Of a stretch of DNA of 64,000 bases, positions 29,067-57,089 are shown piece by piece (the stretch's first letter is position 1; the number at the start of each line of letters is the position of its first letter). The translations under genes and the position numbers were made by a program. Origin of the DNA: Trichoplax adhaerens (Eukaryota > Animalia > Placozoa); assembly GCF_000150275.1 (NCBI RefSeq), contig NW_002060947.1, forward strand, positions 3,464,980-3,528,979. Reading direction: 5' to 3'. The notes beneath the pieces were generated by a model. The model worked only from the letters and a program-made list of their open reading frames with translations. It had not been told where the DNA came from and made no database searches.

Positions 29067-29497
29067 TACGATTGAGTATCTTTACTAAGGAAAAGGATAC
29101 CACTAATTATAAGCTATAATTATTAATAAATAATAATATTTTATAATAGCGTATCACCAATCAAAAGTGTACTCGATTGAAAACTGGAATTACTACAATT
29201 AACTCAATGCAGAAAGTGGGAACTGCGTTGGTACTAGGTACTGTGCAATGCTGTTAATGCTGTTAAGCACAGTACAGTAATAATACTACAGTATGTATGA
29301 TTTACAACAGTTCGCGATTGTACCATGCAGCCAAACAGATACAGAACCAGATTAGCAGTCCAGTACTATACGGACATTCGGAAATGCGGAGCCACAGACG
29401 CACGGACCGTCCGTCTTGTCACCTGGTCTAATCTGTCCAATGACGGTGTCAAAGAACACGGACAGATGGAACTTGTAAACTACGCATGCCAATCGAC

Positions 29498-30122: not shown

Positions 30123-33100
30123 ATGGATGATCGACATTGGTGGTTTGCTACAAAACTGCAAGCCTCATTTCGTATTGGTGGATACGATAAGCCGACACTA
30201 TTGGAGGATTTTATTTGTGAATCAAGTACCTTAGAACATATTGGAAACTTTCTCGGGCCAAATGGGGTTTCTGTTTTATTCTTTTATTGTGAAAAACTCG
30301 ATGAGACAAGGCTATCATCCAGGCGTTTACACGTATCTTATACAGTGCATAAAGATATCGATTTTAACGATATGTTGATCTTGTACTTCTTACGGGATAG
30401 CAATGACGAAGAAATACTACCACATAATATTGCAGACGAAGTATGCTGTGGAGAGTTATCTAGTGCTATTATAGCTAGCTTACAGACATTATTGTCTGAT
30501 AGCTATGCCCCTCTATTAAGAGTACGTAAAGATTGGGGTCAATGTAGTGAAGATAATATATCACAGTTATTCACCAACTTCGATAAATTGATTACTGCAT
30601 TAATCGATTCAGCCGATATTCTATCGTCAAATAAATATATGCTAAAACGACCTGAAGCATCTGTTACAAATGATTTTAAGCTGAATCGTGCTGCAGTTGT
30701 TAACCAAACTATTGTCAGTGAGTTTGAGATTCTTGTTGCTGATTGGATTTCAACTATCGAAACAGTTCTTCAAAATCAAGGCGATGACAGGTAAAATATA
30801 ATTATTCTTATTTCGTTAATGATAGCATGCAGTAATTGGTACAACTATAGCCCCTTGCCTATACCTTAGTTTAATATTAAAAGTATACATAACAGCATAA
30901 ATTATGAATATGTCCTTAAAATATACTTTTTTTTCCTTTGTGACAACTATATCAATTTCTGATATATCTTCTTTGAAATGATTTAGCGGTGTCGATACAA
31001 ATGCTGGTCCGCTCTCAGAGCTATACCGATGGAGACGTCGACATAAAATTTTTACTAATATTACAGATCAGCTAAAAGGAAAAGAATGTAAAGCAGTGAT
31101 TAGTGTATTAATTACAGCAAAATCCAAATTGCTAAAACGCTGGAAAAATATCGATGTATGGTGAGTTGATGCCTATTTTGATGTAATTTGAGACTGTATA
31201 CTTTAAAGCACAGAATAATGCTACCTCATATTGAACGAGTTTTACAAACATGAATTAAGATAACATATATTAATTATATATATAAATAGCTAATGTTGAT
31301 CAGGAAAAAATTAATATCTAAATCTTTTAGCATTAAACATTTTTTATACAATATTGGATAATTGTTGTTCAGTAAAAATTACAGCACGAACAAAATTGCA
31401 TTGAAATTTTTATTACGTAGTAATTAATCATTTTCTAGAGATCAGTTTTAATTGGCTGAAATAATAGAATTATATACGCAATATTAGGTTAAATTTTATC
31501 GATAGGAAATTTTATTTTTAAATTCTGAAATTTACCTCCAATTTGATTCATTAGCATTACTGAAGCCGTTAACGAAACCAAAGATAAAGTAAAGTACTTG
31601 GAGTCACTAAAAAAATATATTGATCAACTTTACCACAACAATTCACCCACACAAATTGCGAGTAATGTCCTACCTATGCTTTTCAATAATATTCGTCAGA
31701 TGGACTCAATTTCTAGGGCGTATGCTCGAAGTGGATATCTTGGCTTATTCTTATCGAAGGTACGTAAATTATGTACATTGCTATGATAGATTTAAGTGAA
31801 ACATTAATGTAGTGCAATATATGAGTGTTATCCTACATAATTGCGATACTATAGGTAAAGTTTTTGGACTACTAGCTGAAAATTAGTTGCGATTTATAAT
31901 TTCCTAACAAATAATTTCTGATATCGCAAAATCATAGCTATTATTGCATTCTGTTAATCGACTCACATTTCAAATAATTGAATTACATACTTATTAAATT
32001 AAATCTGTTTGGTACTACTTTAGATTTGCAATCAAATGGTTGCCTTGTGCAAGGAGCATATTAGTGGAATTTCACTTAATGAGATTGAAATAGACTATGA
32101 ACATTGGAAAAATCTTGAAGACTTGAAGAAAATTTACGACGATCCTAGAGCTAGTGGTAAAAAACAAGCAGGGCATAAAAGTGCGACGATCTTTACTACT
32201 GAGAACCAAGACATGTTAGATAAATATTTGCCACATAGGTTGCTTGCCTGCTTAGCATTAGCTAAATCTATCCGCGATTCAATACGTAATCTTCGAGACA
32301 GCCTAGGTACAGCAGCTTTTAGTACTGTATCTTCGGCATCGCATTTATCATCAATGCAAAATCAGCATAACCAAAATGCGACACCTGCCAAGTGGAAATC
32401 ATCTGGACAATCATTAAATACAGCGCTTAATATTGTTAAACGACTTAATTCTGTTAGTGAAGGAGGAACACCATCAAATCAAATGCCAAATAGCATTGGA
32501 GTATCACTAAATGATGAAGATAGCATTATGTTTCATTTTGACCGTTTTTGCATCCGAGTACGTCATATTATAGGAATTATCCAAACTCTTGCGCAGTTTT
32601 CTCAGCTTGCAAGTCTAACTACTGGATTACCTCGTCTGCACAAACAGTTTAACGTTTCTGCTAGCATTTGGGGTGAGCAAGGTGTCTACGGCCATTGTAT
32701 TACTATATTACATACCGGTAAAGAATCTGTTGCCGCTGTTGGTCTAGCTTACCGACATGTGCCTGCTCCTCACCAGATTACAAGCGTTGTAGAAGAAGAA
32801 GAAGACGATAATAATAGTGAGCGCTTATCTACTCATGGGCAGTCTAACCCCTTAGGCCGAATCAAAGTTACAATTCCAGACAGTGAAGCTGGTAAAATAG
32901 AGAGTGCAGACGGATCACTAGATGACGAACCTACCGAAAGTACCGAAGAAGATCAAGACTTTGAAGAAGAATTAAGCATCACTGGTACAATTAAAACTGT
33001 TATCAAATTTGCGAAGAAGTTACTACGTGATACTGTTACAACAGAAGTTCTGCTAGATGTTGACAGCATGTATCGAGAGAGATTTGATAAAGCTTACGAA

Positions 33101-36100
33101 CACGTTATGGCTATGATCAAGCATTTAGAACAGTATGTCGCTAAATATATCGAGGTATTTCGGAGTAAATCTTATCTTATTGAATAATGTTTTAATTAGT
33201 AATCATGGCTCCATTGTAGACTTTCTGAATAAAATGTACACATACGATGAGCTTTCTCGGCATTGATATTAAATTGTATTTTACAGACTGTTATGTCTAA
33301 AAAGATTACTACACAGCATGCACTGGACATCTTGACGAGGTTCGTTATGTAACTATTAACTTAAAAATACTGTATATGATTGAATGTGATATTTTTAATT
33401 GTAGGTTTAATACAGTACAAAACCGAATGCATATCAGTACGATGTTGAAAGAAAAATTTTATGAGGCTTTCAATTGGTACGAGGAAGAGTTAGAAGAAGT
33501 ACAAGACTTATATGAAAAGAATAAGGTAGCATATCGAGGCTATTTAGTCGTTAGCTCTCAAATCGATATTTAAAATAATAAATCAGAATTGATTAACTTG
33601 CCCACGTAAATATGATTAATCATAGGAAGAGCCACATATTGTTCGACATGCTCCTCCAGTTGCCGGAGCTATTAATTGGATTCGTCAGTTGTTACGAAGA
33701 CTTGAGGAGCCTATGAAGATTTTTTGCGATACTAAATCCGTCATGGCTGTAAAGGCAAGATAATATTAGATAGCTTTAAAAATTAGTTTGTTAAATTGCA
33801 AACGCATTATACAATATACAGATAATTCATGGAATATTTTCAAACTTATAGGATTCCACAAGAGTCATCAAGAATTACAACCGAATCGCATCCACATTGA
33901 TTAAATTTGAAAGTTTATGGTTTAGTCAATGGAAGGCGCACATTGATAGTGCTAAACATGGTCTTAAGGTACCACTTTTGCTTCGTCATCCTAAAACTGG
34001 TGATCTAATCGTTAATGCTGACGAAAGGTAACTCTACTCTTAGATATCATAGAGTAGGAAATATATTCCAGCAATTTACTTTTTTCTGTTAATTAGAGTT
34101 TCTCAAGTTATCCATGAAGGAAGATGGATGGCCAGGCTTAATATTCAGTTACCAGAAAATGCTGTCGCAATCCTATCTCAGGTTTAGTTGATTTTCCTGC
34201 TTTTCCTATTCTATAATTTTATGAATTTAAAGAGTTAGCATATAATATTTTAATCTTCTTCGTACTTGCATAGCAAAATTTATAAATATGTGTATAATTA
34301 TGTATGTATAATTTTCTATTCCGCTCAAGGAATCTCGATTTAAAAAATACAAGCACAATCTTGAAGCGGTACTTCACGAATTCAAACGCGTATGTCAAGA
34401 TATACCGTTACCACTGCAACCATTATTTGAGAAACATACTGAAACCGTTATGCGCTATTTGTTGCCGGGCCTATCGACAGTAACATGGAATAGTATGAAT
34501 ATCGACGCTTATTTACATCATATTCATACTTCTACCAATCATCTAAAAGAAATTGTAGTCAAAGTCAATAATATTTTAATAAGCCGAGTTGATTGTGGGA
34601 TAGCATCGGTAAAAAACGCCATCCTTTTCGATATGGATTCTATGTTTTCTGAAGAGTGGGTAAGTAGATTGTTTTTAATAAAATTTTTAAATTCCATCTT
34701 AAATCTAGTATAAGGAAGATCATTTACTTATTCGCGCTATCTACATCCTTTCTCTAGAGCATTATCGCGTTTCCTAAGTTGCAAATAAAGAATATTGAAG
34801 CTCGTAAGCAGGAGCTACTTTCTAAAATTTACGAGGTTGAATCTGCGCTCCGGGATATTGTTAACATCATTACTGAAAATAACATTAATTCTCAACCATC
34901 GTTACAATACCAAGTTAATGGTAAAGGAGTGATATCGCAATTAACGAAATCGATCAATAAAAACTTGCAGAGTCAATCTTTGCAAGATAGAAATAAAAGT
35001 AGCAACTCTTCGAGTTCAGCCCCGAATTATAAAATTGGTCCATTTAATACTAAATCCTCCAATATGTTCGAGCATTACGGAAAATTAATGCATGATGCTA
35101 TTCTACATAGCATTAGCAAATCACTTTTTACATATGCTGAAGCTCTTGGTTGCAAAATTAATTTTGTTAAGCATCCTACTCAGCTCAATGGTGACGCTAT
35201 CGATAATTTTGGAAATTTAAATAAGGTTCCAACAGTAATAATCAAAGATGAAGCTTCTAATCAAGAAGATATGGTTCTCAAACTTGATAATGCATCGCAA
35301 ATTGTGGCTTATTCTGGAGCAGGTAATTGCAATGTACTTCTGAGAATGCATACTTAATATTATTACTCGTCTTACACGGAAGTAAGGAAGCCTTTAATTT
35401 TATCATTAAATCGCGCCATTTGGCTAGATCTAATAGTCCTATTACGAACTGCTCAATAACGTTAAATCTAGTCATAAATTAATATTATAGTTTGCTCCAA
35501 TTAATGTTCGTGTAGCTTTCAAAATAACAGTTATTGCATCAGTTTTAAATAAACTATTCTTCCTGTTGATCATTATAGAACTAAAGAATGAGGCTCTTTT
35601 GAGATTTAATGTGGATATTAAATTCTCCATACCTGATCTCGTAGTTGAACCAAAGCTGGAAGATGTGCAAACTGCTGTAAATCAAGTAGCTCATGCAATA
35701 ATAGCGATATCACAAGATATTAAATGGACCACAACACAACATGAGGAAAATGCATTGGCATTCAATTTAATTAGTAACGATAAGATTGTAACTGGTATAA
35801 CAAAATTGATCTCTTCTACAATAAGATCATATCAGCAAACAGTTCGTGATAAACTGAATTCATTCCGTCGATTCAATTTCTTATGGGCCAACGATATCCA
35901 CGCAACCTTTAACCAATTTGTTAAATCGGGTATTAGTACATCAGATTGTATGTCGGAGGTTGAGCGATTGCAAAGGATAGAGCGAGAAGTTGAAGATATC
36001 GATGATAAAATTGTTGTTGGTGCTATTAGCCTTGGTACACTTCCTGTTAGGAACTCACTACGTGGATTCGCTGCGGCATGGAAAGTTCAGTACGCATCAT

Positions 36101-39100
36101 ATATGCACGATAAAGCGAAGGTAACCAGCATTATGATACTGTATAGTTGGATTACTTGGTAGTGGTAGTTCTCTTTTATGCTGATATCTAATCATCAAGT
36201 TAACTACAAGTAAAACTACCTACAAGATAAAATCATCCTATAATTACGTTATTGTTTTCAAGCTGTAATTTTGTAAGGTCCTTAATTTGATCTGATTGTA
36301 TACGCGTATTATTAAACTATATAGGGAGAATTAGATAAAATTATTGCATACAGGATGCACATAACTGATCGGTTAGCAAAGGATGTTTTTACATTGGATC
36401 AACTTAATGAGGCTCAGAAGTTGCTACAAGAGTTAAGCGACATGGAAAACACTATAGATGATGTCTTCCTACCAGTTGAAAGAATGTATAGCTTATTAAG
36501 GTACAGTCTCAACCTTAAATGAAATTCATTGTCAGTCATCGTGTTACAAAATCGCCTTTATTTCTTACTTCAAATGCAACTGCAGTAGCTAAAATTTTTT
36601 CTTGTATTGGATTTCCTAGACAATTTAACCTGCGATTGCCAAGATCTGAAGTACAAGAAGTAAGAAATTTAAGAGAAGAGTGGCAAAAATTATTACTTTT
36701 AGCTGAAAAGGTATGTTGCAATACTATACCGTATTCACACAGACGATTAATGAGCATACGTATACGGGAAAAGATTCGGACTAATATCCTGTTTATGCAC
36801 GATGCGCAGGTACGATATCAACTTATGGTTACGCACAGGACAGCCTTTGAGCAAGAGCTAGATAAGCAGATCAAGGTAACAGATTAGTTTGCTATCCGTA
36901 TATGGTGACTTCCTATTTATTTTGTAACTGTTTATATTGGCTAACTAATATCATTATGAAATTATTCAATAATATAATTAGCGAGAAACGAATAAATTTA
37001 TTCATTTACTTACATAACAGGCATTCGTCGTTGATGTAATTCAATTCCGCAATAGTTTTGATGCTCAAGGCCCCGCTATTCCTGGCATTAGGCCAGCGGA
37101 GGCTGTTAAGAGATTAATAGAATTTCAAGACGAATTTCAAAAGTATGACGAAAAGCGCCGAATTTTAGATGCCGTACAAAAACTATTTGGAAAACCGCCA
37201 GTATCATTTCCGGACTTGGACAAAACCGGAGAGGTAAATATATTACATTAGAATGACGTATTTCTACAAGTAGTACAATAATTGATACTTTTCCATAATT
37301 TTGATCTCTTCACACCTTACGTTTCAGGAATTGCATTTACTGGATTTATTATATAGTTTATTTCAGCGATTCTTAGCATTTGATGCCGAGTAAGTATTAG
37401 AGAAGCTAAGCATCTTATTAATGTCTAGAAATATAATTGATAGTAATTAAGTCTACTTTTCCAGTGCTGTTGTACAGATTCCAATATTAAGTCAAAGCAT
37501 GTTTCATTCGTAGGTTTCGAGAAAGATTATGGGCAAAGGCGGACTTAGATAACGCTCATCGACAGGTTAAAACATAAGTTGCTACTACAGCACTGCGATA
37601 GTACCAATTTATAATATACGCAAAATAGCATAATCAATCTCTTACTTAACTAAACTAAACTCGTACGCGCTCTAATAGATGGAAGTCTTCTGGAACGAAT
37701 GTTTAAAACTTCCAGAACAAATCAAGGGTTGGTCTTCTTACAAGGAACTGAAAGGATTAATTGACGGCTATTTGGCTCTTTTCCCAGTGTTACACCGTCT
37801 TGCATCTAAAGTAATATAATTAATATAATAGTCTAGATAGATTCAAAAACTTAATCTTTATAATTAGTAAAGGTATCTTGATCATCTACGGTGTTATAAT
37901 TTAAATACATACTGCAGATATTGCTATATGCTGTAATTATTAATAGATACTGCAAATAGTAATGCAATTACTAAATGTTCGCATTTATGCATATCACAAT
38001 CAGCATAAAAGAGCCTGATAGCAATAATATTCAAGTATACCATCTTTGTCTTCAATAATTAATGAATCCAAGTACAAACATATATAATATCCCAGCAACT
38101 ATCACTTATGTACGATAGGAAATACGTAATCGTCATTGGTTAGATGTCATGGTTGCAACAGGTTCATCCTTTCAGCTGGAAGCAAACGTTTTTAAATTGA
38201 AGCATCTGTTAGATATTGGTTTACTCAGGTACGAAATATTTCATTTAAAAATTCGAACGATGCACTTACGTGTGATTATTGTATTAAATTTGCAGTTGTA
38301 TGATGCAATGAATAAATTATATTTAATATAGACATCAGAATGAAATTGGCGAAATTACTCGATGTGCTAGTCGAGAGTTAGAAATTGAAGAAACATTGAG
38401 GAACATAGAAGAGGAATGGACAGAACAAGTTAGTTAATGAAGGATCATGTTATATTTCTTAAGAATAAGTGATACGGGTACTAAATTTTTTTGCAATTTA
38501 TGATAGGTCCTTGCTTTTGATGAATTTAAGAATCGTGGGTTCTTATGTTTAAGCGCTTCAAATACTCAGACGCTGCTTGAGCAGTTGGATGACTCTCAAG
38601 TTTCGCTGGCCTCTATGCTAACTTCTCGTCATATTGGTCCTTTAAGAGATGAAGCAGCTTCCTGGGCAACAAAACTAAATAGTGTATCTGAGATTCTAGA
38701 ATTGGTGAGCATAAAACAATTTTGTTTAAACAGCGGTGTTATCTAATCAAATTTTATTACAAAAATAATAAACGATCACCTGTAAGAAGTTCTAGAGTTG
38801 AAATCTAATGTTTTCAGCTTCATCAGCCTTCATGACATTGAATTTCTATGTTTATAGTGGTTATCCGTTCAAGAGTTGTGGCTGAATTTAGAAGCAGTAT
38901 TTTATCAGGCGGAAACAATCAAGGTTATAATTGGCACATCGTTAATAGCCAATTGCTGTTCCTTTAAGACATCTAATAAAAATTAACTTTCACAGGAATT
39001 ACCGCAGGAGGCAAGACGATTTAACAGGATTGATAGAAGTTGGAGCAGGCTTATGAAACAAGCTTACGAAATTAGAAATGTTTTACAGGTATGATGTTTT

Positions 39101-42100
39101 GACGAAGCTTATACAATGCGCAGATGCCATAATAAACCTTCTTAAAGATATCTAGATAATCTTTATACCGACATAAAGATTAGCGAATTAAAATCTTGTC
39201 TATCCTAGTAGCACCTCAATTCAAGTTTTTTACTTGTTCTGACAAAACTAGCAGTTACATATCTCAGATACAACATAATACTATGACTTACTTAGTCTTA
39301 GTTTTCGGTAATACATGCAAGAGACCTGAGAAAATTTATTGTAACCACTGAGGGTTAAATTTGGAATAACATTCTGATTTCTAGTGTTGTTTCCGCGGCG
39401 ATGTCCCTAAATATACCGTGCTAAAGCACTTGCTGGAAGAACTAGAATTATGCTTCAAATCGTTGCTCTCTTATTTGGATCAAAAGCGCAGGGTAAATAT
39501 TATTTTACTCAATACATCCTTTATATTAGGTTATTTACAATATTATGTTATTAATCAATTCTTACTTAAATGGATTATAATAACAGGAATTTCCAAGGTT
39601 TTACTTTGTTTCCGATTCTATCTTACTATCTGTATTGCGATCTGCGCGTACACTTGATTCTGTAAGGCCGCATCTAAGGTAAACCGGCAGCTAGCTATGC
39701 CTGATACGCATTTCGATATTCGTCCTTAGCTGTCGAGAAGCTATACCGTAACTAATTAACATTATTATTCGTCGTAGATCTATCTTTGGTAATATCTCCA
39801 ACTTAAAAATTAATACTGCTGCTCCAATATCGCGTAATAAGAAAGTTTTAGCGCCCTTGGTAAGAATGCATTAATAATCGGTTGAAATGGGAATTGTTAA
39901 CTAAGCTATTTGTCATTGCATTGGTAATAGGATCATCAATCAGAGCACAGTAATGCTCCATCGGCCGCTACTTTTCGTAAAAGAAGTAGCATGGATTTTA
40001 TTCCTATTTCGCTAAAACGGCGTAGCAGTCAAGATATGATAAACATCCCATTTCATAGAAGCTCACAAAATGCCATTTCATCCGGAGTATCCATCGCCAA
40101 TTCTGTTTCTGATGCAGACGGACTATCTGATTCCATTAGTAAAATTTACGCCGTTGTTTCACCTGAATGTGAAACCTTACAATTGTCAACTCAGGTAATA
40201 TTTACTTTGCCGTCATTTTTACGGATTTATTGTTTTATTACTGGATATTGGCGTTTTTTATATGCTTACATAATAAATATAAAATTTTATCCTTAAATTT
40301 CAGGTACCGCTATCTGGTGGTGTTCAAGCCTGGTTAAATGCTTTGTCGACTTCGGTTGAGAAAACACTACTGGAATTAATAAATGATCAAGTCGACGATG
40401 TTCTTGCAATGACATCTATCGATGAATGGGCTTATAAAGTATGCTTAAAGAATTAGAATTAAAATTTTTATAAGCCTACGAATTAGTATTGTACTCTTGC
40501 TTTTCAATTAATAAGATAATACTTACAGTACGCTTAGTTACGGAATGAGTAAAATTATTTTAATCAAAAATGCGATATTAAGTCATAAGGAGTTATAGTA
40601 AGAATTTTTTGATTACTAACAGATTTTAATTTTATTTAGTATCCAGCTCAAGTTGCTCGTCTTGGTTTACAATATTATTGGACTAAGGAATGTGAGCAGG
40701 TAAAATATTCATTTGCTTATATATATATATGTTACGTAGATAGATCAATTCCATGTTCTCAATGAGCTACCAAGAAAATTCCTTGCGCTCATAGCAGTCC
40801 TTAAAAATTTTGACAGGGCATTACTGAGATTAGAACTGAAAGGAAATCTTTGAGTAATACTTCCAGGCGATTTTGGTCCTTTTTAAGTAAAACTACAGTG
40901 ACCATTTCAAGAGTAAACTGGAAGCACGTTGATGAACCTGTAACAAACGTACATCGTCTCCGTCTGGAGACATTACTAGCGGTACTAGAACTAATGCTAC
41001 TCTTTTTATTTTTTACTTTTGCTAAAGTATAACATTGGAATTACTATTTGCGGAAGTCTTACAAATCTTCCTTATACCTATTTTGCTAGTAGACTTAGGT
41101 AACAATTTTTATCTTCTTTTGTAGCATGGCCTTTATATGCGGGATGTTCTAGATGACTTAGCCAAGAAGAAACTGCGTGAGCAGACTGACTTTGAATGGA
41201 AGAAAAACTTAAGATTTTATCACATGAAAGAAGATTCCCATAAAGGTAACATAGCCTTCTTAAGCGATTTTGTTACGATTTGAAGAATAATTCATTATTT
41301 CTTATAACATTTTAACACTTGATAATGAACAAATTTTGAACATGATACGCATTGTGTAATCTGTCTTTATTTCACTGTCACTGTTTAACATCATTAGAAG
41401 AAAAGGTCCCCCAAATTTGGGTTCTTGACACAAAATTTAACTATGGTTTTGAGTTTTATGGATGTATGTCTCCTATTATTATGACGCCTTTAACAGATCG
41501 ATGCTTCCTATCACTTAGCCAGGTATTCGAATATAATAACTTGGATTAAATAATGAAGAGTAAAGAAATCACTAAAGTTTCTTGAGTAAAAAATAAAATA
41601 TATGCGTACATAATTATAAATTAAATCATTAAATAATTCTATTAAGGCTGTTTCAAATCATCGAGGAGCAGCACTTTGTGGCCCTTGGGGCACCGGAAAA
41701 ACGGAAACTATCAAGGTACAGAGTGGATACCTACTGCCTTCGTTTTATTTTAAACATAACTTTGTTTAGAGACATTTTCGTAATATTTAAATTTTTACTC
41801 CATAGGGATTTGCTCATATGTTAGGTGTCTATCTAGTAGCCTTTAGCTGTTCTTTACAATCTGAACCATCCAGCTTAATTCGAATTATCCATGGTCTTGC
41901 ACAGGTATATATATTATTATAGTAACCAATTCTATCCAATTCTGTACAGTACACGTCAGTGTAGGGCTTAAATGAAAAGTATCATATTTCAGGATGGTTG
42001 TTGGGGCTGTTTCGATGATTTTCATAGAGTTCAAGTCTCTACAATTTCTGTACTATCACATCACTTACAAATAATCATGAATGCACTGCGTACGAAAGAA

Positions 42101-45100
42101 ATTTTTTGCACTATGCCGGGAGGCATCGAGGTAAATCAGAATATTTATAAGTAATCCCATTATCAGGGCTTTTAGTACCTTATATTTCGTAAAATATATC
42201 AGTATGTTATAAATATAAATTTTTATTTATTTTCTTAACTTAGATTACGATAAACCGAAAAGTTGCCTTCTTTATGACATATGATACTTCATATGGAAAC
42301 CAAGGTGATCATCTATTACCGAGTGATATCCGAACCCTCTTTAGACCTATTGCCTTGACTGCTCCTGATGTTGGTTTAATTCTTCGAGCCTACTGCACTT
42401 CTAAAGGCTTCAAAGCGCCACGAGTTTTGGCAGATAGAATCAAACTGCTATTAAGTATTTCTAAGCATCTAGTGTAAGTATTATGACATATATTCGTTTT
42501 CAAGCTGATAGTTATAATTAAGTAAAGTATGATATTTCGTGCAATGCTGATGCTTTATTTCGTACAATTTTCTTTAAATCTGACGAACATAACTCTGCAA
42601 CCCTTACAGGAAAAGTAATAATCAACATAAGATTAGTTTATCATCCATTCTGTCATGTATCAGCTACGCAGCTAAGCGACGTGATGATTACCAAGCCTTG
42701 CAAAATAACCCTAAAATGGGTGACATTGCTAGATCGAATAGCGCTTCTTCAACGCAGAATCTAGGCGCAAGTAAGCAAAGACATAACCATTAAAGTACAG
42801 AGATAATTATCTCATCATATTTCCTTTTAATATATAATTGCAATATATCCGATTTCAGGCGGTGGTGGATTAAGACCTCGAGCTGAAACTACCAGGAAGA
42901 ATACTCCTTCACAACAATTGTCTCCAGCAATACGTGGAGAACATATGTTTGTTTCACACGCTATCCAAGATCTAATTGTACCTCAGATCTCTCCAGAGGT
43001 ATTAAATACTGCTCTTATTAGATAATGCTTCTAGTTAAACGTTTTCTAATAAATTAAGGCGATAATTATAAATTATGGAAAACACCGATGATTTCCAAAC
43101 TTTGTATTGGATTAATTTTATCATAATTGATTCAATTCACGAATAATTTTATGCATTGCAGTACACTATGCTTACATCGATATTATATAGATATTTCTAT
43201 TGCACCTTTCCTAACATACCTAACTTGGATGTATTATATGCAGTACTTGCATAAATATGAAAAATCTTGCTCTTCTGAAAGACTCTTAATTTGCTAATGT
43301 TGTGTTTAATTTTTCTTTCAATATAAAATTAGAATTTCGCTGTTTTTAACAGCTTACTCCATGATATATTCTATTCTTCCTCTGATCCATACAAACTGGC
43401 TGGTTTCCATGACGGTAGTGGTACTGTTGAAGAGGCATTCATGCAACAGACTCAAAAAAGCGGTCTACATTTTCACGCTCCGTGGGTATCAAAAGCTATG
43501 CAATTGCATAAACTATCGAAAGTTCATCATGGTATGTAAAGAATGTATAACAAATAAAATTTATTAAAGTAGTAAAACTAATGCATTGCAAGTATGAAGA
43601 TGTGTACGATCATATAAACCATAATTTTCAACCAGGAATAACCTCTATAATTCTAATTGCCTTGTTATAATTGCATAAATAGGAGTAGTTGTTGCTGGAC
43701 CACCTGGTAGTGGAAAATCGACAATGATTTCTACACTTATCGATGCGTTATCCCTATGCTCGAAAAATGATCAAGGAGATGGCAGTAAAAAACATATCCA
43801 TCGATTGCAAAAGATTAATCCAACTGCAGTATCAAATTTATCGCTAATGTTCGGTCGGTTGAATGCATCTAACGATTGGGAAGATGGTATATTTACGGCG
43901 TTATGGAGAAAAGCCAATAAAAATTTAGCAACAACAACGTGGTTATGTTTAGATGCAACGCTAGCACCGTATTGGGCCGATAATTTGAACTGCATTATCG
44001 GTAATGGCCGATCTTTGGATCTTTTAAATGGAGAACGCTTATTCCTAAGTGATAACGTCAAAATATTGTTTGAAACTCATGATGTTAGTAATGCTTCCCC
44101 GGCAGTATTTGGACGTACTGGCATAGTCTACGTTGATGATGGCGTATTAGGTTGGGTGCCTTTATCACATGCGTGGTTAGCATCAAGAAACGATCAGGAG
44201 ATTAAAGTCCTACAGCCAGTCTTTAGTGCAATTATTTCAGATGTAACCAATTTTATTAGTTACGACTGCCAAGTTATGGTTAAAGTATGTGAAATTGGCT
44301 TATTTCAAACGTGCTTATCGTTATTAACCGCCTTATTAGAAGAACAAGCCGAGGTAATTGCCGATCTGCATATTGAACGATTATTTCTGTTTTCGGTTAT
44401 ATGGTCTTATGGTATGATTATGAACGATCATGATCGTGGACGATTTAGTAATTTAATGAAAAGTCTATCGACAGCTTTACCAGATTACGATCTAGGAATA
44501 TCAGTATTTGATTATTATGTAGATGAATCAGGTGAATGGGATCCATGGACATCACGCGTGCCAGAATTTTCACCTGATTCAATGGATTTCTTGGGTGAAA
44601 CTTTTATTGATACTGTTACAACAGTTAAAATTAGCCGTTTAATGGAATTGTCATTTAGTTCTGGCCGTAATGTTTCAATTATTGGACCACCAGGATGTGG
44701 TAAAACAGTGACTGTTAACCGTTTCTTAGATCAGCAAGATGGTTCAAGCATGGTTACAAAACGTATTGTTTTCTCTGGGACTTCCAGTGCCCACGATTTG
44801 CAACATTTTATAGATGAGAATGTTTATCATCGTCAAGGCTTCGTATATGGTGCTAAAGATGGCAAGAAATTATGTTTATTCGTTGATGATCTTAACCTAC
44901 CAACATCCAATAGCGACAAAACAATACAAGAGAGCCATGAATTATTGCGTCAACTATTGGATGATAAGTTAATTTTCAATTATAACAAAATTGGCGATTA
45001 TCGAGTGATTGAAAATTTACAGGTGATTGCTACCGCTACGTCTTCATCATCATCCACTATTAACACTACAACATCAACTATGAAGTCTGTCTTACCAGAT

Positions 45101-48100
45101 CGATTAAAACGCCATTTTTCTATTTTTTATTTACAAGAACCAACTGGTAATGCTCTAAATAGTATTATGTCAGGCATAGTTCACGCTAATCTTTACCTCT
45201 ATGAAAGTGTTCTGAATCCAGACTTAATGAATACATTAACTCAGGCATCATGCGATGTTTTAGCACGCATAAAATCAGTTTTACGACCATCACCGGTACC
45301 TGGTCGATATCAGTATTCTTTTAATTTACGTGATCTTAATAGAGTTATTCAAATGTTAAAAAGATTATCCAATCAACCCAGAATTGATGAATTATCAATT
45401 GTATCCTTATGGAAGCATGAACTTGATCGTACTATACGTGATCGTATTTGTCGCAACACTGATTTAAATTGGTATGACGGAACCGTTGTGAAAATCCTTG
45501 AGGAATACTTCCCTAATATTTCCAAGGATGAATTAATACAAGATTATATTACATTCAAATTGGAACCCATACGTAGTCGTACACATACAGGAGCTACCGT
45601 TAAAGATTATATTCAGCCAATCACTAATATGAGTGAAATTATGGGATGGATTCGTGATCAAATGATTACTTACAATGAGGACTTTGGTAATCGCAATTTA
45701 AGCGTTATATTATCGGATTACATCGTCGCTCATGTCGTTCGTTTATTACGAATTTTAAGCTTTAATAACAGGTTAGTTGCAGTTTACCTTTATTGGTATA
45801 ATGTTAAAAATAATATTATGACTCATCTAATTTTTGTAATTTGTTATAGAAGTAATCTTATTAAGGGTGTCGTATAGACTTATCTCTTGTCTTAGATTAA
45901 TTACTAAGTCGGGATAGTATAGGTGTAGTTTAGTTAAGTAATTTTTGTATAGTGCTTTTATTCTACATTAAACTTTTATTGATAATTTAATTCTTTATGC
46001 ATTTTCTTATGTGATATTAATTAACTTTACAGAGGTAATGCTGTCTTAGTCGGACAGGTTGGTAGCCATCTTTCAACTTACGTCCGTTTTGCATTATATG
46101 TTTGTGGTATTCCACAACATCATGTTGATACATCATCCGGAAATACGTTTTATGATGGATTACGCTCAGCTGTTCGATTAACTGGCGCAGAAGGAAAGCG
46201 ATTAGCTATTGTATTAAAAGCTAACGATTTAAAAAATAGTGTTATTATTGATGCCGTCAACAGCATCTTAATTAGTGGTGAATGCTCGAAATTATTTTCT
46301 AATGACGAATTAGATGGCTTATTGCAAGCACTGTCTCACACCTTGAAACGCAATTATTCCAATATGGATACTAATCCAATGGATTTCTTTATCTCACGCG
46401 TTAAATCCAATCTACATATTATTATAACTATACCGCCAACCAACAATTTATTAAAAGTCGCCGCCAATCAATTTCCCGGCTTTATATCGTGTTGTCATAT
46501 GGATTGGCTAATGGACTGGTCAAAGCCATCGTTAATAAGTGAAGCAACGCATTATATTGCTGAATATAGCATCATGGAACATAGTGCTGAAGATATACGA
46601 GGTAAGGTCGTCCATAGTATGGCCGATATCCATGTATTTATGTTGAAGGAGTGTGATCAACTTCCATGGGCGATGGATAAATACAACGCTAATCAAAGTA
46701 ATGATCCTAAACAATGCTTACCGTTTGCTAAAAATGCATTAGTTGAAAGGATAACTACAAAATATGATAAAAAATGGCAGAATCGTAAAGACGTCTTTGT
46801 TGGGCCAAATACATACCGTCGATTCATGAATGCTTTTAAGAAAATCTATACAACGAAACATCAAGAAGCTAATACAACTATACTTAAATTACGTAAAGCA
46901 TTACAGACGCTAGAAAGTACGAAAATCGAAGCTGAATCAACGGCATCGGATATTGAAAAGATGAAATATAATTTACGCTTAGCGACTGATCGTTCTGCTT
47001 CATTACTACAGCAATTAACGATACGAATAACACAATTAGAGAAATTGAAGGCTAAATTAGGTACAGGTGGCAATGTATTAGATGCATTTGCGACTATCAA
47101 TGAGTTAGAGATGGCATCAGAAGTAGAATCAGTGCCGCTACCCTTAGATGATGAAATGGATGAGCTGGATACTGAATTTGAAAAATTACGTCAAATTAAA
47201 TTACGTAAAAAGCATGATAAGTTAATGGAAGACATTACTCGGGCACAAGAAGAAGTCGATGAAGCGAAGAAAGCCTTAAGTGGTGCTAAAAATCAAATAC
47301 GCCATTGGAGAAACAAAATTGATCGTAGTTGCGTTGAACGTTTGCGTGTATTCCAAAATCCACCTTCGCTAGTCGGCACAGTTATGGAAATGACGATGGT
47401 ATTATTAGGAAAGTTGGAACCATCACCAGCTTACTCAATTAACTATAATACATCTAGCTCTAATATCGCTTCAAATACGGGCAATAATTACGACGACGCA
47501 TATTCATCAATACCGCGTGGCTCTAGCTTTGTAGGAAAATCGAAGCGTGGACGTGATCACACTAATAATGCATCCAATCATAATCGTGTCGACCGTGATC
47601 TATGGAAATCAATTCAATTAGCTATGACTGATTCACAAAAATTTATTGATGCTCTATGGAATATACAGTGGGAAGAAGGTTTAAGTCCTGACAAGTTGGC
47701 AATTATGGAAAATTACTTAGGTAAAAAATCACCTACTAACTTAGCACAAACAAATAATCAATTAACGGGACTAAGCATTACTGAAGAAATGAATCAAAAT
47801 CACCACCATCATCACCCCATCACATCAAATTTACTGGCATCGGGTAGCACATTTTCTCCACGTCGATTATCAAGCTCTACATCAGTAAGTTTTCAAACAG
47901 GAACACAACAAACAGGTGCTGTACCACCTCCTAATATTACTATTGCAGCTGCTAAATATTCATCGGAAGATGCTGCTATCTTAGTTGCATATATTATGGC
48001 ATTAGTTGAATATACATATCAGTATTCACCTGTACGTGAGAAAATTGAGCGATTACAAGAATTATTGATTGAAAAAGAGGAAGATGAAAGGCGTGCTGCG

Positions 48101-51100
48101 GAAGAAGAGGATGAAGTTGAACAAGAGGAAGAGCAACGAGAAGAGATACAAATTGAAGATGAATTGTCTATCGATGATTACGACCGTATTGAAGAAGAAG
48201 CACACCAGTTGCAGATTGAATATGACCGTGCAGCTGTCGAAAAGCATATTTTACAAAAGGAATACGATATTAATACACAACGATTGCAAGCAGCTATGGA
48301 AGCCATCAATAGTCTTGAAACACAAACAAAGTTATGGCAAGATCTAGTCGATGAGAATACATCGTTAGATTTACTACTAGCTAATTGTGTTTGTGCTAGT
48401 GCATTTTTAGCCTATTTAGGACCGCTCGGTGCCGATGCACGATCAAATTGCGCTGCTGAGTTTATGCGAGCGTGTATGGGGAATAAATTACCAGTGGCTA
48501 AAAAAGCGATATTTACGGACGTTACCCTAGCTGAATTTGTATTAGGCCAAGCTAATTTAAGGCGTATTGAAGTAAGTGAAAGGCTTCCTAAAGATATTTT
48601 ATCGCAAGAAAACTTCTGCATCTTCAAATACCAAGTTTATTGTAATTCATGGATATTGTTATGTGATCCGCAACGTATCGCATCCACATATGTCGCTGCT
48701 AATGTTGACGACATTACTATAGTTCGCTATAAAGAATTACGTAATCAACTAGATACATGTTTAAATGATGGTAAGGAAATACTAATTACTGACGTAGACA
48801 CCAAGAGTATACTTGAAGATAAACGCTTTTCGATACTATTGCGCCATGCTGATCTATTTGATAAAGAGCGTGAAACATTTAAAATGATGATTGGTGATCA
48901 TGAAGTTGAATGTAATCCACAATTTAGAATGACATTATCAACGTCTTGTCTGCCTATGAATGTACCAGATGAGTTGGCATCTCAATTAAGTGTAATTGAA
49001 TTATCACATTCAACCCAAGGTCTCGAGGAGTTATTATTGGATTTCTTTATGCAAAAAGAGAAAACGCGCATTGATGAAGATAGCACACAAATCGCTGAAG
49101 AAATGATCGCTATCTATAATCGTTTGGAAACGATTGAGCAAAATATGCTAGAATTATTATCATGCAATAATAAATTACTCCACGATCTGACGATGACTAA
49201 AAAATTAACCTCATTAAAGAAAGCTTACGATGAAGCTATTGAAAATCAAGCTAGAGTCAAAGTTAACGAAGATAACATCATTAATACACGGCAGCATTAT
49301 CGACCTGTAGCGAAACGCGGTGCAGTCCTATTTAATGTCTCCAAGCAAATGGCATTAGTAAATCCAATGTATCAGATATCATTAGATCAATTTTTGAACA
49401 TGTATTCAACATCTATATTGCATTCAGATAGAACTGTTGTTAAAGCAGTCGTTGATCGTCTAACACAATTAGTCTTCTTTTCAATCGCGCGTGGCTATTT
49501 CGAAATTGATCAATTTTTATATGCATTGCATTTAGCAATTGAAGTCGAAGGGTCGGAAGGACGTGTTGGCAATCTAGAAAGAGAATATCTTATATCACCG
49601 ACTTTAGCTAATCAACTTATGATGGCTCAAGGTAAACCAGCGGTCTCTGATTTGCCACCAAGTAAACATATGGGTAAAAAACCATTTGAATGGATGTCTG
49701 ATGATCAATATCAGAATTTATTAACATTGGCTTCATATTATGATTGGTTTACTGATTATTTTGAACGCATGACACGTGATGGTCGCGAAACTCAATGGCG
49801 TGCATTATGTGAACATTTAACGCCTGAAAATGCTGCATTACCTGATATTATCGAAGATCGCTTAAAACCAATGCAAAAATTATTAATATTACGCGCAATA
49901 CGCCCTGATCGGCTATTGCAAACTACCGCTGCGTTTGTTGTATCAGTTTTAGGTAAACGCTATGTCGGTGAGGTTGCATGTGATTTGACAACGTCGTACA
50001 AGCAAGGCAATAATCGCCAACCAATGCTACTGGTATTTTCCTCGGAAGCTGAAACTGCTGAACGCTTAGTTTATGATTTTTCTGTCAAACGCGGTATACC
50101 GTTAGTTAATTATAATATGTGCGACTCAATAGCTGAAGAAAGTCGCATTAATAAAGCTGTTCAACGTGGTATGCTCAACGGCCAATGGGTAATGTTACAT
50201 AATGCTCATTATGCACCCCATTTATTAAATACGCTAAATACAATCTTATCGGATACGAAACAAATTGATCCATCATTTAGGTTATGGATATCATCAAAAC
50301 CAAATACGATATTATCACATCAGTTATTACAGTCATCGATTAAATTAGTTGTTGAACCACCTAAGCGCATGAGAGAATCAATATTAAGCTGCTTAAATTG
50401 GATCGAACCGGATACATTCAAAACAAGTCAGCGCTCAGAGTGGATACCGTTATTGCATAATCTGTGCTTACTGCATAGTTCATTGCGCCTACGTACAAGA
50501 TACAAGAATCGTGGTTGGAATGCTCCATATGACTTAGAATGGAGTAATTCAGAATTTTGGCAAGCTATTGAATTCTTTCGACGTGAATTTGCTAATATTG
50601 GTGTATTAGAAAGTAGCGGCGGTGCAACTGGTGTAAAAAATATAACTTGGACTGGTTTACGCACCATGTTATCAGAAGTTATCTACGGCAATATTATATT
50701 CGATAAATTCGATCAAGCAACGCTAAACGCTATTGTTGAAAAATGGATTAATTCAGGTGCAATTAAACGTGATTCTGAGCCTATGAAGGTAAAATATCGC
50801 GCACCTGCTATTATTTTTAGTCCTAATGTCCGAATGTCAGCTATAGCTCAAGCGATGGAAAATGTAAATCATTCAATATTAGATGTGCCTGAAGCATGTG
50901 GACTACATTCATCATCTGAAGTAGCGCTGGATGAAGGACCTTATCTATTTTATATGCTAAGTAAAATTATACATGATATGCCAGATATTGGAAATCGTAA
51001 ATGGAACCAGGATCAACAAGTTGCTACCTCGGATAAAACAATTACTGTTAATCAAGCTTTAGCCATACCTCACAATACTAATGCCCAGCCATTACATACT

Positions 51101-52752
51101 GCGTATTCTGATCTAGATATAATAATATCATCGACTTTTATTCCTGGCCGTCGAAGTCGTTATGTTGACATACATGAAATTGCTATTAATCTACTAAGTA
51201 AGTTACCAAAAGGCTGGACACGAGAGTTCATTCATGAAAGAATTAAAAAGAAGAAAGGATCTATTCATTCGCCATTTAATCAATTCGTATTATCTGAGGT
51301 TGAATTAATGAATAAGTTAATTCAACAGATTCGATTAACTTTAACAAGCCTTAAAGAAGCTACACAACATGACTTACTGGGTGACCATACTAATGATGAT
51401 GCATTACGAGCTGCAAGCGATCTATATTACTTGAGAATACCTGAAGATTGGTGTAAATTGGGTGGACCCTCAGCACCTCCGCATCATTGGAATTTAGGTT
51501 ATTGGATCGATGATTTTAATAAACGTTTTCAACATTTAGACAGAATGCTGTTACAGGTAAGAAATAGCTATTCTGAAATTGTCAGGCACACCTAGTCATT
51601 CCTCGTACTAAACTTTAAAACAAAAATAGTTACAATTTCTACTTAAACTCGTATACTATAACCTACGTAGGATTCTCTCGAGTAGTACAGCTATCCCGCT
51701 GGCTTCCTAGGATATATGTTTAATATTTACTTGATAGATTATCTCAAAGTAATTTAAACCATGCTAATTATTTCCCATTCCCATTCTGTACTATTCTTGT
51801 TATAAAATAATTTTAAATATTTTACTAGCAAGTTCAAACTAGTATGATAGGCTTATAAAATATAATGTATTTATTTTCTATATGAGTACATAAATTATCC
51901 TTCTTAATATCTTTCTGGAAATAAAATATCAATATTTTTTATTATTTCTTGCTAGACTCGAGATAAAATTCCCGCGTATTGGCTCGGTGCTCTATTTCGA
52001 CCCCAAAGTCTACTCGCTATCATCAAACAGGCATGTACTTGATATCATGAAGTGCTAGTAAGCAATACCAGATCTTCAAATGATATGCATATTGACTAGA
52101 AAGAATATTATAATATTACTATAATATATTCAGCGTTTAATATGAATAACGAGTATGGTAAACTAATCTGTATATGAGCACGTATTTGCTATCTACTCAT
52201 TGATTAACTTGACTAAGTATCATTAATATCGTATCGTTGGACCATTGCAGGATACAATTCGCGCACATTATAAGCATGGCATAGCAGAAGAGTACGTCTT
52301 ACAAATTGAATTAACTGCCAGAGATAAAGATCATGTAAGTAAAAATATTTAAAAATCAGAAAATTATATATAACGAAAAACGATAAATGTTATAATTGAT
52401 TAAATTTGAATTTTTTTAACTTTTATAGCTAAGAGATGCGCCTAATGAAGGCATGTTTGTCTATGGAATCTACGTTTGGGGAAGTTCTTGGGAAAAGACT
52501 GCCGGTGAACTACAAGATGCAGCCCCTAAATCAAATCCATCATCGCTTCCAGTCATTCATATCACTGCAGTACCAATATCAGATAAACCATGGATAACCG
52601 ATCCTAGCTCATATCCATCAGTTTATCAATGTCCATGTTATTGTTCCCGTATGAATCGAGTGGAACCATTATTTTGCTTAGATATCAAAAACGATAGTGG
52701 CGGATCGCGCTGGGCACTTAGAGGACTGTATGCAACATTACGTCCATTTTAA
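30123..52752 (+). CDS. Divergent axonemal dynein heavy chain, outer-arm gamma (DNAH5/DNAH8-like) type; ~45 exons, roughly 5,200-5,300 aa by hand tally
   Basis: Tail matches the DNAH5/8 pattern (GPLSELYRW..QLKGKECKAVISVLITAKSKLLKRWK..ITEAVNETKDKVKYL; PPVAGAINWIRQL). Linker motifs EIRNRHW and FPRFYFVSD. AAA1 GPWGTGKT (41680-41703), AAA2 GPPGSGKS (43697-43720), AAA3 GPPGCGKT, stalk/MTBD, AAA5-6, C-terminal GMFVYGIYVWG..W and YQCPCY..RWALRG. First exons 30123-30790, 30987-31160, 31555-31759, 32024-33154; last exons 43683-45771, 46033-51556, 51956-52030, 52251-52334, 52429-52752. Confidence 0.93.
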
Positions 52753-56777: not shown

Positions 56778-57089
56778 CTTGATATCGATTAGAGCAGTAG
56801 CAATCCAATGATAAAAACTATACAAAGATCCAATAATAAAATTACCTGAATCGTTGATTGATTTTATTAATGTTTTCTTTAGTATGATACGATATAAAGT
56901 CCTTTATACTTTTACGGTATCTATTTCTAAACTGAATAAGGCAGGCTATCGGAAAGTGGAATGAATTTCTTCTGTACTTAGACCAATTAGTGGAATTGAA
57001 AGCAACTTAGCTGCGTCCAAGTATTCAAGTTTCCTTCAAAAAAATAAATTAAGGATTAGCGCATATAGAGAAAGAGTAATAGATAGAAA

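What the first reader, a model, noticed from the sequence alone, without database searches (positions are those of the whole stretch)
41647..42660. Full-length gamma-type dynein with a degenerate AAA1 hydrolysis site: candidate ciliary pseudo-motor
Seen: the AAA1 P-loop is retained (GPWGTGKT, with W at the usual A), but Walker B reads WGCFDDFHR (GAT at 42017-42019) instead of WGCFDEFNR, the sensor-I segment reads FMTYDTSYGNQGDHLLP instead of FITMNPGYAGR.ELP, and the sensor-II segment reads QHKISLSSILS (Ser at 42641-42643) instead of HYDFGLRNILS. Established: AAA1 is the main ATP-hydrolysis site driving the dynein power stroke, and this Glu, Asn and Arg are near-invariant in active dyneins. Inference: several catalytic substitutions in an otherwise intact ~45-exon gene point to a nucleotide-binding but hydrolysis-poor dynein kept for a structural, braking or regulatory role in cilia. 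It may belong to an already catalogued divergent invertebrate DHC subclass; I cannot check that.
Basis: partly seen in the sequence, partly recalled or inferred. Interest (0 to 1): 0.82.

Follow-up and report, generated by a model that had tools for sequence, protein, structure and literature searches.

The report
Placozoan DNAHX, a non-motile dynein

Summary
On the + strand, 44 exons (30123-52749) encode a 5245-residue dynein heavy chain. Its AAA1 site reads GPWGTGKT, FDDFH, FMTYDTSYGNQGDHLLP and HKISLSS at the stated codons.

Every canonical heavy chain I aligned has GP(A/S)GTGKT and DE, and 20 of 21 have NPGYAGR and an L/M-R sensor II. That includes two normal gamma-type paralogues in this genome.

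So is its caveat that the class might already be catalogued.

The gene is the placozoan orthologue of DNAHX (Chai et al., bioRxiv 2025, PMC11785096).
- It is about 99.9% identical to the public Trichoplax sp. H2 model.
- One exon is 44.6% identical to the 5272-residue Lytechinus type protein, against about 30% to canonical gamma chains.
- It sits inside a 100/100-supported DNAHX clade.
- It carries the family's AAA4S and stalk/microtubule-binding-domain insertions.

Kollmar (2016) had already counted three metazoan gamma subtypes.

Small additions from this work:
- Across 35 family members the P-loop GKT is kept (34 of 35) while the sensor-II arginine is never kept.
- The Walker-B glutamate was lost several times independently.
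- The AAA4 P-loop lysine is absent in all seven clade members aligned there.

Verdict: already known, low novelty. The scan's own notes held no earlier dynein finding.

The parts
30123..52752 (+). Whole DNAHX-type dynein heavy chain gene: 44 coding exons, 5245 codons, stop TAA at 52750-52752.
   Evidence: One search places 5244 of 5245 residues of Trichoplax sp. H2 P0247 on the window with 5 mismatches. Block ends are good to about 2 nt. Searches give dynein Pfam domains and PDB matches.
30123..30788 (+). First exon, N-terminal tail (MDDRHWW...), conserved with sea urchin DNAHX.
   Evidence: P0209 residues 1-233 are 44% identical to this exon. maps the exon.
41647..41715 (+). AAA1 Walker A exon: GPWGTGKT. 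Trp replaces the usual Ala; Gly, Lys and Thr are kept.
41993..42130 (+). AAA1 Walker B exon: WGCFDDFHR. Asp (GAT 42017-42019) replaces the catalytic Glu.
   Evidence: FDDF is shared with vertebrate, tunicate and Owenia members.
42244..42473 (+). AAA1 sensor-I exon: FMTYDTSYGNQGDHLLP. Asn becomes Asp, the GYAGR loop is replaced, and the loop is 3 residues longer.
   Evidence: Pfam AAA_6 (PF12774) matches at E=2.2e-11.
42610..42772 (+). AAA1 sensor-II exon: NQHKISLSSILS. Ser (TCA 42641-42643) replaces Arg.
43685..45772 (+). Exon for AAA2-AAA3. It has the AAA2 P-loop GPPGSGKS, the AAA2 arginine finger (SPAVFGRTG) and the AAA3 P-loop GPPGCGKT.
   Evidence: This exon was used for the homologue search and the tree.
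46034..51556 (+). Giant exon of 1841 codons: AAA4, stalk and microtubule-binding domain, AAA5, AAA6 and the start of the C-terminal domain.
   Evidence: No Pfam PF12777 (stalk/MT) match.
46052..46078 (+). Degenerate AAA4 Walker A: GQVGSHLST where canonical chains have GVGGSGKQS. The P-loop Lys is lost.
   Evidence: The change is shared by all DNAHX members aligned.
46673..46795 (+). [quoted passage not shown] It includes the conserved helix motif LPFAKNALVERITTKY (46718-46765).
   Evidence: Alignment, coordinates. The AlphaFold2 model gives a helix at residues 233-248 but with low pLDDT and no hairpin.
47060..48199 (+). Stalk and microtubule-binding region. Family-type insertions: CC1 (47060-47317), pre-H3 (47423-47590), H5 (47720-47935, with a His run) and CC2 (48062-48199).

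Best explanation
The gene is the Trichoplax orthologue of DNAHX. This is the third metazoan subtype of the outer-arm gamma heavy chain (called OAD-alpha, DNAH5/8 type, in animals).

Shown here:
- It is intact and about 5245 residues long.
- It belongs to the DNAHX clade.
- Its AAA1 site keeps the residues that bind ATP-Mg: P-loop G, K and T, the first Walker-B Asp, and the AAA2 arginine finger.
- AAA1 has lost the residues that hydrolyse ATP or sense the gamma-phosphate: Walker-B Glu to Asp, sensor-I Asn to Asp with the GYAGR loop rebuilt, and sensor-II Arg to Ser.
- The AAA4 P-loop is lost.
- The family's insertions in AAA4S and in the stalk and microtubule-binding domain are present.

Inferred from the sea urchin cryo-EM work: the motor binds ATP as a fixed cofactor, stays in the pre-powerstroke shape, binds microtubules poorly and does not step. 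Through its conserved tail it pairs with another heavy chain ('dynein-X'). It may hold that partner inactive during delivery into growing cilia or flagella.
For: Orthology:
- The AAA2-3 exon finds seven representatives at 433-631 bits (38-45% identity), then a gap to 335 bits for canonical gamma chains.
- The family found with Rhinatrema P0005 includes the 5272-residue Lytechinus variegatus 'DNAH8-like' protein P0209 and the Trichoplax sp. H2 protein P0247, with a gap from 908 to 601 bits.
- P0209 matches the preprint's description of the type protein in length, annotation and four motif details: GGTGVGKT, DE kept, N-S-E-T, and L-K.
- The window exon is 44.6% identical to P0209, against 29.6% to this genome's own canonical gamma chain.
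- In reverse, P0209 scores a summed 3939 bits on the window against 1484-1652 on the canonical paralogues.
- In the tree the DNAHX clade is supported 100/100 and the window exon lies inside it.

Other evidence:
- Motifs.
- Insertions and the AAA4 P-loop.
- Neither the window exon nor any of the family members carries a PF12777 stalk match, whereas canonical chains do.
- Intactness: a 1841-codon open exon in DNA of about 34% GC, and 44 exons collinear with P0247.
- Published mechanism for the family: PMC11785096.
Against: No expression, protein or biochemical data for Trichoplax were available here.

Asp can sometimes stand in for a catalytic Glu, so some residual hydrolysis is not excluded.

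The predicted AAA4S insert is low-confidence (pLDDT 37-53) and shows only the helix, not the beta-hairpin seen in sea urchin. The Trichoplax insert is also about 16 residues shorter, so the 'lock' may be weaker.

The functional model rests on a single preprint, and only one copy of that work is in the searched library.

In my tree DNAHX is sister to the whole eukaryotic gamma clade rather than nested among animal gamma chains. That may be long-branch attraction and leaves the date of the duplication open.
Confidence: 0.87

Rival explanations
1. It is a working motor with an unusual active site: the Walker-B Asp acts as the catalytic base, and the dynein still hydrolyses ATP and moves.
For: The P-loop, the Mg-binding Asp and the AAA2 arginine finger are intact. 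E to D is chemically conservative.
Against: The sensor-II Arg and sensor-I Asn are also gone, and the phosphate-release loop is rebuilt. Sea urchin DNAHX, which still has DE, was found with unhydrolysed ATP and only in the pre-powerstroke state. The Glu is replaced by D, N or other residues independently in several lineages, which shows it is not under constraint. The stalk and microtubule-binding domain are interrupted by four insertions.
Confidence: 0.06
2. It is a decaying or recently relaxed duplicate of the Trichoplax gamma chain, that is, a pseudogene in the making.
For: Several catalytic residues are lost, and there are low-complexity insertions (Ser-rich stretches, a His run) in the stalk region.
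Against: All 44 exons are open, including single open exons of 696 and 1841 codons. Orthologues at 40-48% identity occur in cnidarians, molluscs, annelids, nemerteans, echinoderms, hemichordates, amphioxus, tunicates, fishes and amphibians. There are only 5 differences in 5245 residues from Trichoplax sp. H2. The same motif changes are family-wide, so they are ancient.
Confidence: 0.02
3. It is an orthologue of DNHD1, the other 'orphan' dynein with a degenerate AAA1, rather than of DNAHX.
For: DNHD1 also lacks the catalytic Walker-B residues and carries disordered insertions, according to PMC11785096.
Against: Every close relative found is a DNAHX-type protein annotated DNAH5/8-like or gamma-like. 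The tail and motor align along their whole length with the gamma class. The preprint reports no sequence homology between DNHD1 and DNAHX beyond the shared fold. I made no direct comparison with a DNHD1 sequence.
Confidence: 0.02

Closest known systems
DNAHX (type protein: Lytechinus variegatus XP_041462850, 5272 aa; Chai et al., bioRxiv 2025, PMC11785096)
   Same: - Same clade (100/100 support).
- Same unusual length (5245 against 5272 aa).
- Conserved N-terminal tail.
- Degenerate AAA1 sensor I and sensor II with the P-loop GKT kept.
- Insertions at the same sites in AAA4S, CC1, pre-H3, H5 and CC2.
- No Pfam stalk match.
- The preprint itself names a placozoan orthologue.
   Different: - Trichoplax has Asp for the Walker-B Glu, where sea urchin keeps DE.
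- It keeps the first Thr of GTGKT, where sea urchin has Val.
- It has Trp at P-loop position 3.
- Sensor-I Asn is replaced by Asp.
- Sensor II has Ser rather than Lys.
- The AAA4S insert is about 16 residues shorter and seems to lack the hairpin part.
Canonical outer-arm gamma / OAD-alpha heavy chains (DNAH5, DNAH8, Chlamydomonas ODA2). Two copies are in this genome, at G000:C1403 ~1.876 Mb and C1410 ~3.862 Mb.
   Same: Same overall architecture and closest class by PDB search (human DNAH5 8j07_n0 is the best match). The tail is alignable and the C-terminal domain is shared.
   Different: Only about 30% identity. Canonical chains have GPAGTGKT, DE, NPGYAGR and GLR, an AAA4 P-loop GSGKQS, an AAA3 P-loop of the GEQGTAKT type, an uninterrupted stalk, and about 4500 residues.
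Kollmar's class DHC3 subtypes (DHC3A/B/C; Mol Biol Evol 2016, PMC5100056)
   Same: That survey states that the OAD gamma class split twice at the base of Metazoa. It lists three sea urchin members (DNAH15, DNAH5, DNAH8) against two human ones. Trichoplax likewise has three gamma-type genes, one of them this gene.
   Different: Equating DNAHX with one particular DHC3 subtype or with sea urchin 'DNAH15' is my inference and was not checked against that paper's sequence files. The 2016 text as searched does not discuss loss of catalysis.
DNHD1 (orphan heavy chain needed for sperm flagella in mammals)
   Same: According to the preprint it has a degenerate AAA1 without catalytic Walker-B residues, disordered insertions, and is presumed non-motile.
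   Different: It is a different lineage with insertions at other sites and is not the nearest relative by any search run here.

Membership tests
DNAHX dynein heavy chain subfamily | Forms one clade with Lytechinus variegatus XP_041462850, apart from canonical OAD-alpha/gamma chains, with reciprocal best matches | tested here: met
   In the careful IQ-TREE tree of the AAA2-3 region the clade has 100/100 support, and the window exon lies inside a 96/98 sub-clade. Forward: 664 bits to P0209 against 338 to the canonical paralogue of this genome. Reverse: 3939 summed bits against at most 1652 (tested against the window and the three nearest paralogue loci only).
DNAHX dynein heavy chain subfamily | Unusually long protein (about 5200-5400 aa, against about 4500) | tested here: met
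   5245 codons in 44 exons. Family members found are mostly 5150-5500 aa.
DNAHX dynein heavy chain subfamily | [quoted passage not shown] | tested here: met
   GPWGTGKT; TYD...GNQGDH in place of TMNPGYAGR; L-S in place of L-R. Walker-B DD is an additional departure.
DNAHX dynein heavy chain subfamily | Pre-sensor-II insertion (beta-hairpin plus alpha-helix) in the AAA4 small domain that contacts the C-terminal cap | tested here: inconclusive
   A 41-residue insertion lies at the homologous site with the conserved L-P-[FY]-x-K-x-[IL]-x-E-R-I helix motif. The AlphaFold2 model gives a helix at 233-248, no hairpin and pLDDT below 55. Contact with the cap was not modelled. The preprint notes that the hairpin is unstable in some members.
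DNAHX dynein heavy chain subfamily | Insertions in stalk CC1/CC2 and in the microtubule-binding domain (pre-H3, H5) | tested here: met
   Insertions of 86, 56, 72 and 46 residues relative to canonical chains, at the same alignment positions as in Lytechinus, Nematostella, Lottia, amphioxus and Xenopus. No PF12777 match.
DNAHX dynein heavy chain subfamily | ATP trapped in AAA1, motor locked in the pre-powerstroke state, no motility, heterodimer with another heavy chain | not testable with these tools
   This needs purified protein or cryo-EM. It is known only for the sea urchin protein.
Canonical outer-arm gamma / DNAH5-DNAH8 motors | Catalytically complete AAA1 (GPAGTGKT, DE, N of sensor I, R of sensor II) | tested here: not met
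   The two canonical Trichoplax paralogues meet it.
DNHD1 | Groups with DNHD1 sequences in a heavy chain phylogeny | not tested
   No DNHD1 sequence was obtained. All near relatives are DNAHX-type.

The most novel reading that the evidence does not exclude
DNAHX is not tied to free-swimming sperm, as the preprint suggests, but is a general assembly or regulatory factor of motile cilia. It uses ATP only as a permanently bound structural cofactor.

Trichoplax keeps an intact copy, yet flagellated sperm have been seen in placozoans at most once in more than 1000 TEM sections (PMC3098260). Across the family, GKT is kept while the catalytic Glu was lost at least three times independently. The AAA4 site is dead and AAA3 has a textbook P-loop. 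This hints that any remaining regulation runs through AAA3.
Probability: 0.3. Interest if true: 0.45.

Novelty: already known. Interest (0 to 1): 0.22.

Why it matters
It shows that a reader working from raw DNA alone correctly recognised a pseudo-motor dynein, and it pins the placozoan DNAHX gene to exact exons.

For the field the gain is modest. First, there is a 35-species motif table showing that nucleotide binding is conserved while hydrolysis residues drift. Second, the Walker-B Glu has been lost repeatedly. Third, the AAA4 P-loop lysine is missing in all seven clade members aligned there.

Trichoplax is a small, clonally grown animal covered in motile cilia. It could be a convenient system to ask what DNAHX does outside sperm.

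Tried and rejected
- The word search with the 1856-residue exon returned only two distant protist dyneins. The tool's length window excludes 5000-residue proteins, so this says nothing about relatives.
I ran the reverse comparison locally against the window and the three nearest paralogue loci instead.
I therefore had no second placozoan DNA sequence and could not compute dN/dS.
- The PDB held no DNAHX chain among the matches; the best match was human DNAH5.
- A search for alternative exons encoding canonical motifs found none.
- The structure prediction of the AAA4 module did not resolve the insert with confidence.
- The scan's own notes held nothing on dyneins.
Exons were searched one by one by reference, and the public protein P0247 served as the spliced proxy.
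- Pseudogene, active motor and DNHD1 readings were considered and rejected, as set out under the rival explanations.
Full report
**What is in the window**

The window is AT-rich animal DNA (about 33% GC). It comes from a 105.6-Mb, 1414-contig assembly, at G000:C1410:3464980-3528979. Earlier notes of this scan call the genome Trichoplax adhaerens. The near-identity to a Trichoplax sp. H2 protein found below agrees with that.

Stop-to-stop frames on the + strand between about 30.1 and 52.8 kb carry dynein domains: DHC_N1, AAA_6, AAA_7, AAA_8, AAA_9, AAA_lid_11, Dynein_heavy and Dynein_C. The best solved-structure match for the two large exons is human DNAH5 (8j07_n0). It scores only 327 bits over 690 residues and 442 bits over 1856 residues. 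The gene is therefore gamma-type but far from a normal orthologue.

**Checking the observation**

Read directly, the AAA1 region is split into short exons.
- 41647-41715 gives CGPWGTGKTETIK.
- 41806-41904 is the next exon.
- 41993-42130 gives DGCWGCFDDFHR, with GAT at 42017-42019.
- 42244-42473 gives FFMTYDTSYGNQGDHLLP.
- The exon from 42610 gives NQHKISLSSILS, with TCA at 42641-42643.

All coordinates in the finding are correct. These translations are exact substrings of a public gene model, Trichoplax sp. H2 'Dynein heavy chain 5', P0247, residues 2228-2460.

Walking P0247 along the window places 5244 of its 5245 residues in 44 collinear blocks from 30123 to 52749, with five mismatches. No other frame in the window encodes a canonical Walker B, sensor I or sensor II.

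Each exon was searched by reference, and P0247 served as the spliced proxy.

**Is it unusual within its own genome?**

The AAA2-3 exon finds about a dozen heavy chain loci in the assembly. The two nearest, at C1403 ~1.876 Mb and C1410 ~3.862 Mb, are about 30% identical. Both have textbook AAA1 motifs (GPAGTGKT, WGCFDEFNR, TMNPGYAGR, YDFGLR), as does the outer-arm beta gene on C1413 for the three motifs found there. Trichoplax thus has two normal gamma chains plus this divergent third one.

**Relatives**

A full HMMER scan of 1.84 billion representatives with the 732-residue exon gave seven hits at 433-631 bits (38-45% identity). These were amphioxus, frogs, a caecilian, reedfish, coelacanth and one unnamed JGI/IMG fragment. 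The next hit dropped to 335 bits, where canonical gamma chains begin.

I then searched with the complete caecilian protein. This listed a continuous family of mostly 5150-5500-residue proteins from amphibians, non-teleost fishes, tunicates, amphioxus, hemichordates, echinoderms, molluscs, annelids, nemerteans, cnidarians and Trichoplax sp. H2. A gap from 908 to 601 bits separates them from ordinary DNAH5/8. None of these members carries the Pfam stalk domain PF12777, which the canonical chains listed below them do carry.

**Link to the literature**

[quoted passage not shown] The main points of that preprint are as follows.
- The type protein is Lytechinus variegatus XP_041462850, annotated DNAH8-like, 5272 residues.
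- The family branches from the OAD-alpha (DNAH5/8) chain.
- It occurs from sponges and placozoans to frogs and is absent from reptiles and mammals.
- It has insertions in the tail, stalk, microtubule-binding domain and AAA4 small domain (a pre-sensor-II insert that grips the C-terminal cap).
- AAA1 holds unhydrolysed ATP and the motor is seen only in the pre-powerstroke state.
- It pairs with a second heavy chain, and this 'dynein-X' can adopt the autoinhibited phi conformation.

The family contains a 5272-residue L. variegatus 'dynein heavy chain 8, axonemal-like' protein, P0209. Its motifs reproduce the details in the preprint's text: Walker A Thr to Val (GGTGVGKT), Walker B DE retained, sensor I Pro to Ser and Tyr to Thr (VNSET), and sensor II Arg to Lys. 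I therefore take P0209 to be the type protein.

**Membership tests**

- Phylogeny. On the AAA2-3 region (46 rows, 715 columns, LG+C20 PMSF), the DNAHX clade has 100/100 support. The window exon pairs with Trichoplax sp. H2 (100/100) inside a 96/98 sub-clade with cnidarian and bilaterian members. The two canonical Trichoplax paralogues sit in the animal DNAH5/8 group on the other side.
- Reciprocity. The window exon scores 664 bits (44.6% identity) against P0209 and 338 bits against its own canonical paralogue. P0209 scores a summed 3939 bits against the window and 1484-1652 against the canonical loci.
- Length. 5245 residues.
- Insertions. An alignment of the first 1000 residues of the giant exon with six clade members (including the long-branch Sycon protein) and six canonical chains was made. 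It shows a 41-residue insert in AAA4S at the PS2i site, with the conserved helix motif. It also shows inserts of 86, 56, 72 and 46 residues in CC1, pre-H3, H5 and CC2 at the family's positions (coordinates).
- Structure. The AlphaFold2 model of the AAA4 module (mean pLDDT 76) folds the AAA+ core well. The insert has pLDDT 37-53, with one helix (residues 233-248) and no hairpin. I score that feature inconclusive. The Trichoplax and cnidarian inserts lack the strand-like segment seen in sea urchin. This agrees with the preprint's remark that the hairpin is not stable in some members while the helix is conserved.

**What the motifs say about mechanism**

In 35 DNAHX-clade sequences the P-loop GKT is present in 34; the exception is a partial model. 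The sensor-II arginine is present in none (K in four echinoderms; otherwise S, A, Q, T, P or E). The GYAGR phosphate-release loop is never kept.

The Walker-B Glu is kept in echinoderms, hemichordates, most molluscs, nemerteans and cnidarians. It is Asp in Trichoplax, Owenia, tunicates and vertebrates, and Asn in amphioxus. On the tree this means at least three independent losses.

The AAA2 arginine finger is kept in Trichoplax and most members. This is the pattern expected if ATP binding is selected and hydrolysis is not. It matches the trapped ATP seen by cryo-EM.

Two further family-wide traits, not discussed in the preprint's main text as searched, are these.
- The AAA4 P-loop is lost: GSHLST where canonical chains have GSGKQS.
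- The AAA3 P-loop has a textbook G-x-G-K-T in 20 of 21 core members (GPPGSGKT type; amphioxus has ASGKS), where canonical gamma chains mostly have the GEQGTAKT type.

**Earlier cataloguing**

Kollmar's 2016 survey states that the OAD gamma class (DHC3) split twice at the base of Metazoa. It lists three sea urchin genes (DNAH15, DNAH5, DNAH8) against two human ones. This fits a third subtype absent from mammals. That this third subtype is DNAHX is my inference and is not verified.

**Rivals**

- Pseudogene. Excluded by 44 open exons, a 1841-codon exon, deep orthology and near-identity between two placozoan lineages.
- Active motor using Asp as the catalytic base. Unlikely given the other losses and the sea urchin data, but only biochemistry can exclude it.
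- DNHD1. A separate lineage according to the preprint. It was not among the named relatives, but I did not compare it directly.

**Verdict**

The thing is already known: it is a member of DNAHX, whose placozoan orthologue the preprint already modelled.

Two points remain open and mildly interesting. One is what the protein does in an animal where flagellated sperm have barely been seen (PMC3098260). The other is whether the shortened AAA4S insert still locks the motor.

Noticed in passing
window 46052-46078: The AAA4 Walker A of this gene and of all six other clade members aligned there has lost the P-loop Lys. Five of the six read G-S/T/C-H-L, Xenopus has G-S-R-L and Sycon is more divergent, against canonical GSGKQS. 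I did not find this discussed in the main text of the DNAHX preprint.
   Followed up: partly
window 43685-45772 (AAA3 P-loop GPPGCGKT): DNAHX members have a textbook G-x-G-K-T AAA3 P-loop in 20 of 21 core rows, mostly of the GPPGSGKT type. Canonical gamma chains mostly have the GEQGTAKT type, and both Trichoplax paralogues do. The regulatory nucleotide sites seem rewired: AAA4 is off and AAA3 is canonical.
   Followed up: no
G000:C1403:~1866001-1886000 (L001+L004) and G000:C1410:~3852001-3872000 (L002+L005): There are two canonical DNAH5/8-type gamma heavy chain genes with complete AAA1 motifs. One lies on the same contig, about 350 kb from the DNAHX gene. Both have very large exons (open frames of 2792 and 1841 codons).
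   Followed up: partly
proteins P0249 (Octopus bimaculoides 'DNAH5 isoform X2') and P0016/P0155 (Sycon ciliatum, 5434-5437 aa): Both fall inside or at the base of the DNAHX clade on very long branches. They have lost even parts of the AAA1 P-loop (GTPDAGKK; GNYSAAKT) and the Walker-B Asp. If the octopus placement is real, a cephalopod with internal fertilisation keeps a strongly degenerate copy.
   Followed up: partly
protein P0020 (4624 aa, source not looked up): It groups with fish DNAH8 in the tree but has GPAAAGKT and a rebuilt sensor-I loop (MSPKHADFQD), with DE and GLR intact. It may be an independent, partial degeneration of AAA1 in a canonical gamma chain.
   Followed up: no
window 47720-47935: The H5 insertion of the microtubule-binding domain contains a run of five His and Ser/Thr-rich low-complexity sequence. 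The insertions differ in length and sequence between species.
   Followed up: no
window 12789-14551 and 18077-19564 (+): Tandem pair of CUB-domain plus trypsin-like serine protease genes. The first has a Thr/Pro/Gln-rich linker exon (about 13287-13607) between the two domains.
   Followed up: partly
window 1799-2491 (-), 25062-26984 (+), 28518-29081 (-), 55062-56903 (-): The neighbouring genes are ordinary animal genes by Pfam: a KCTD8/12/16-type BTB protein, an SLC35F transporter, Jagunal, and an EHD (EH-domain, dynamin-like ATPase) gene in a single 614-codon open frame.
   Followed up: partly
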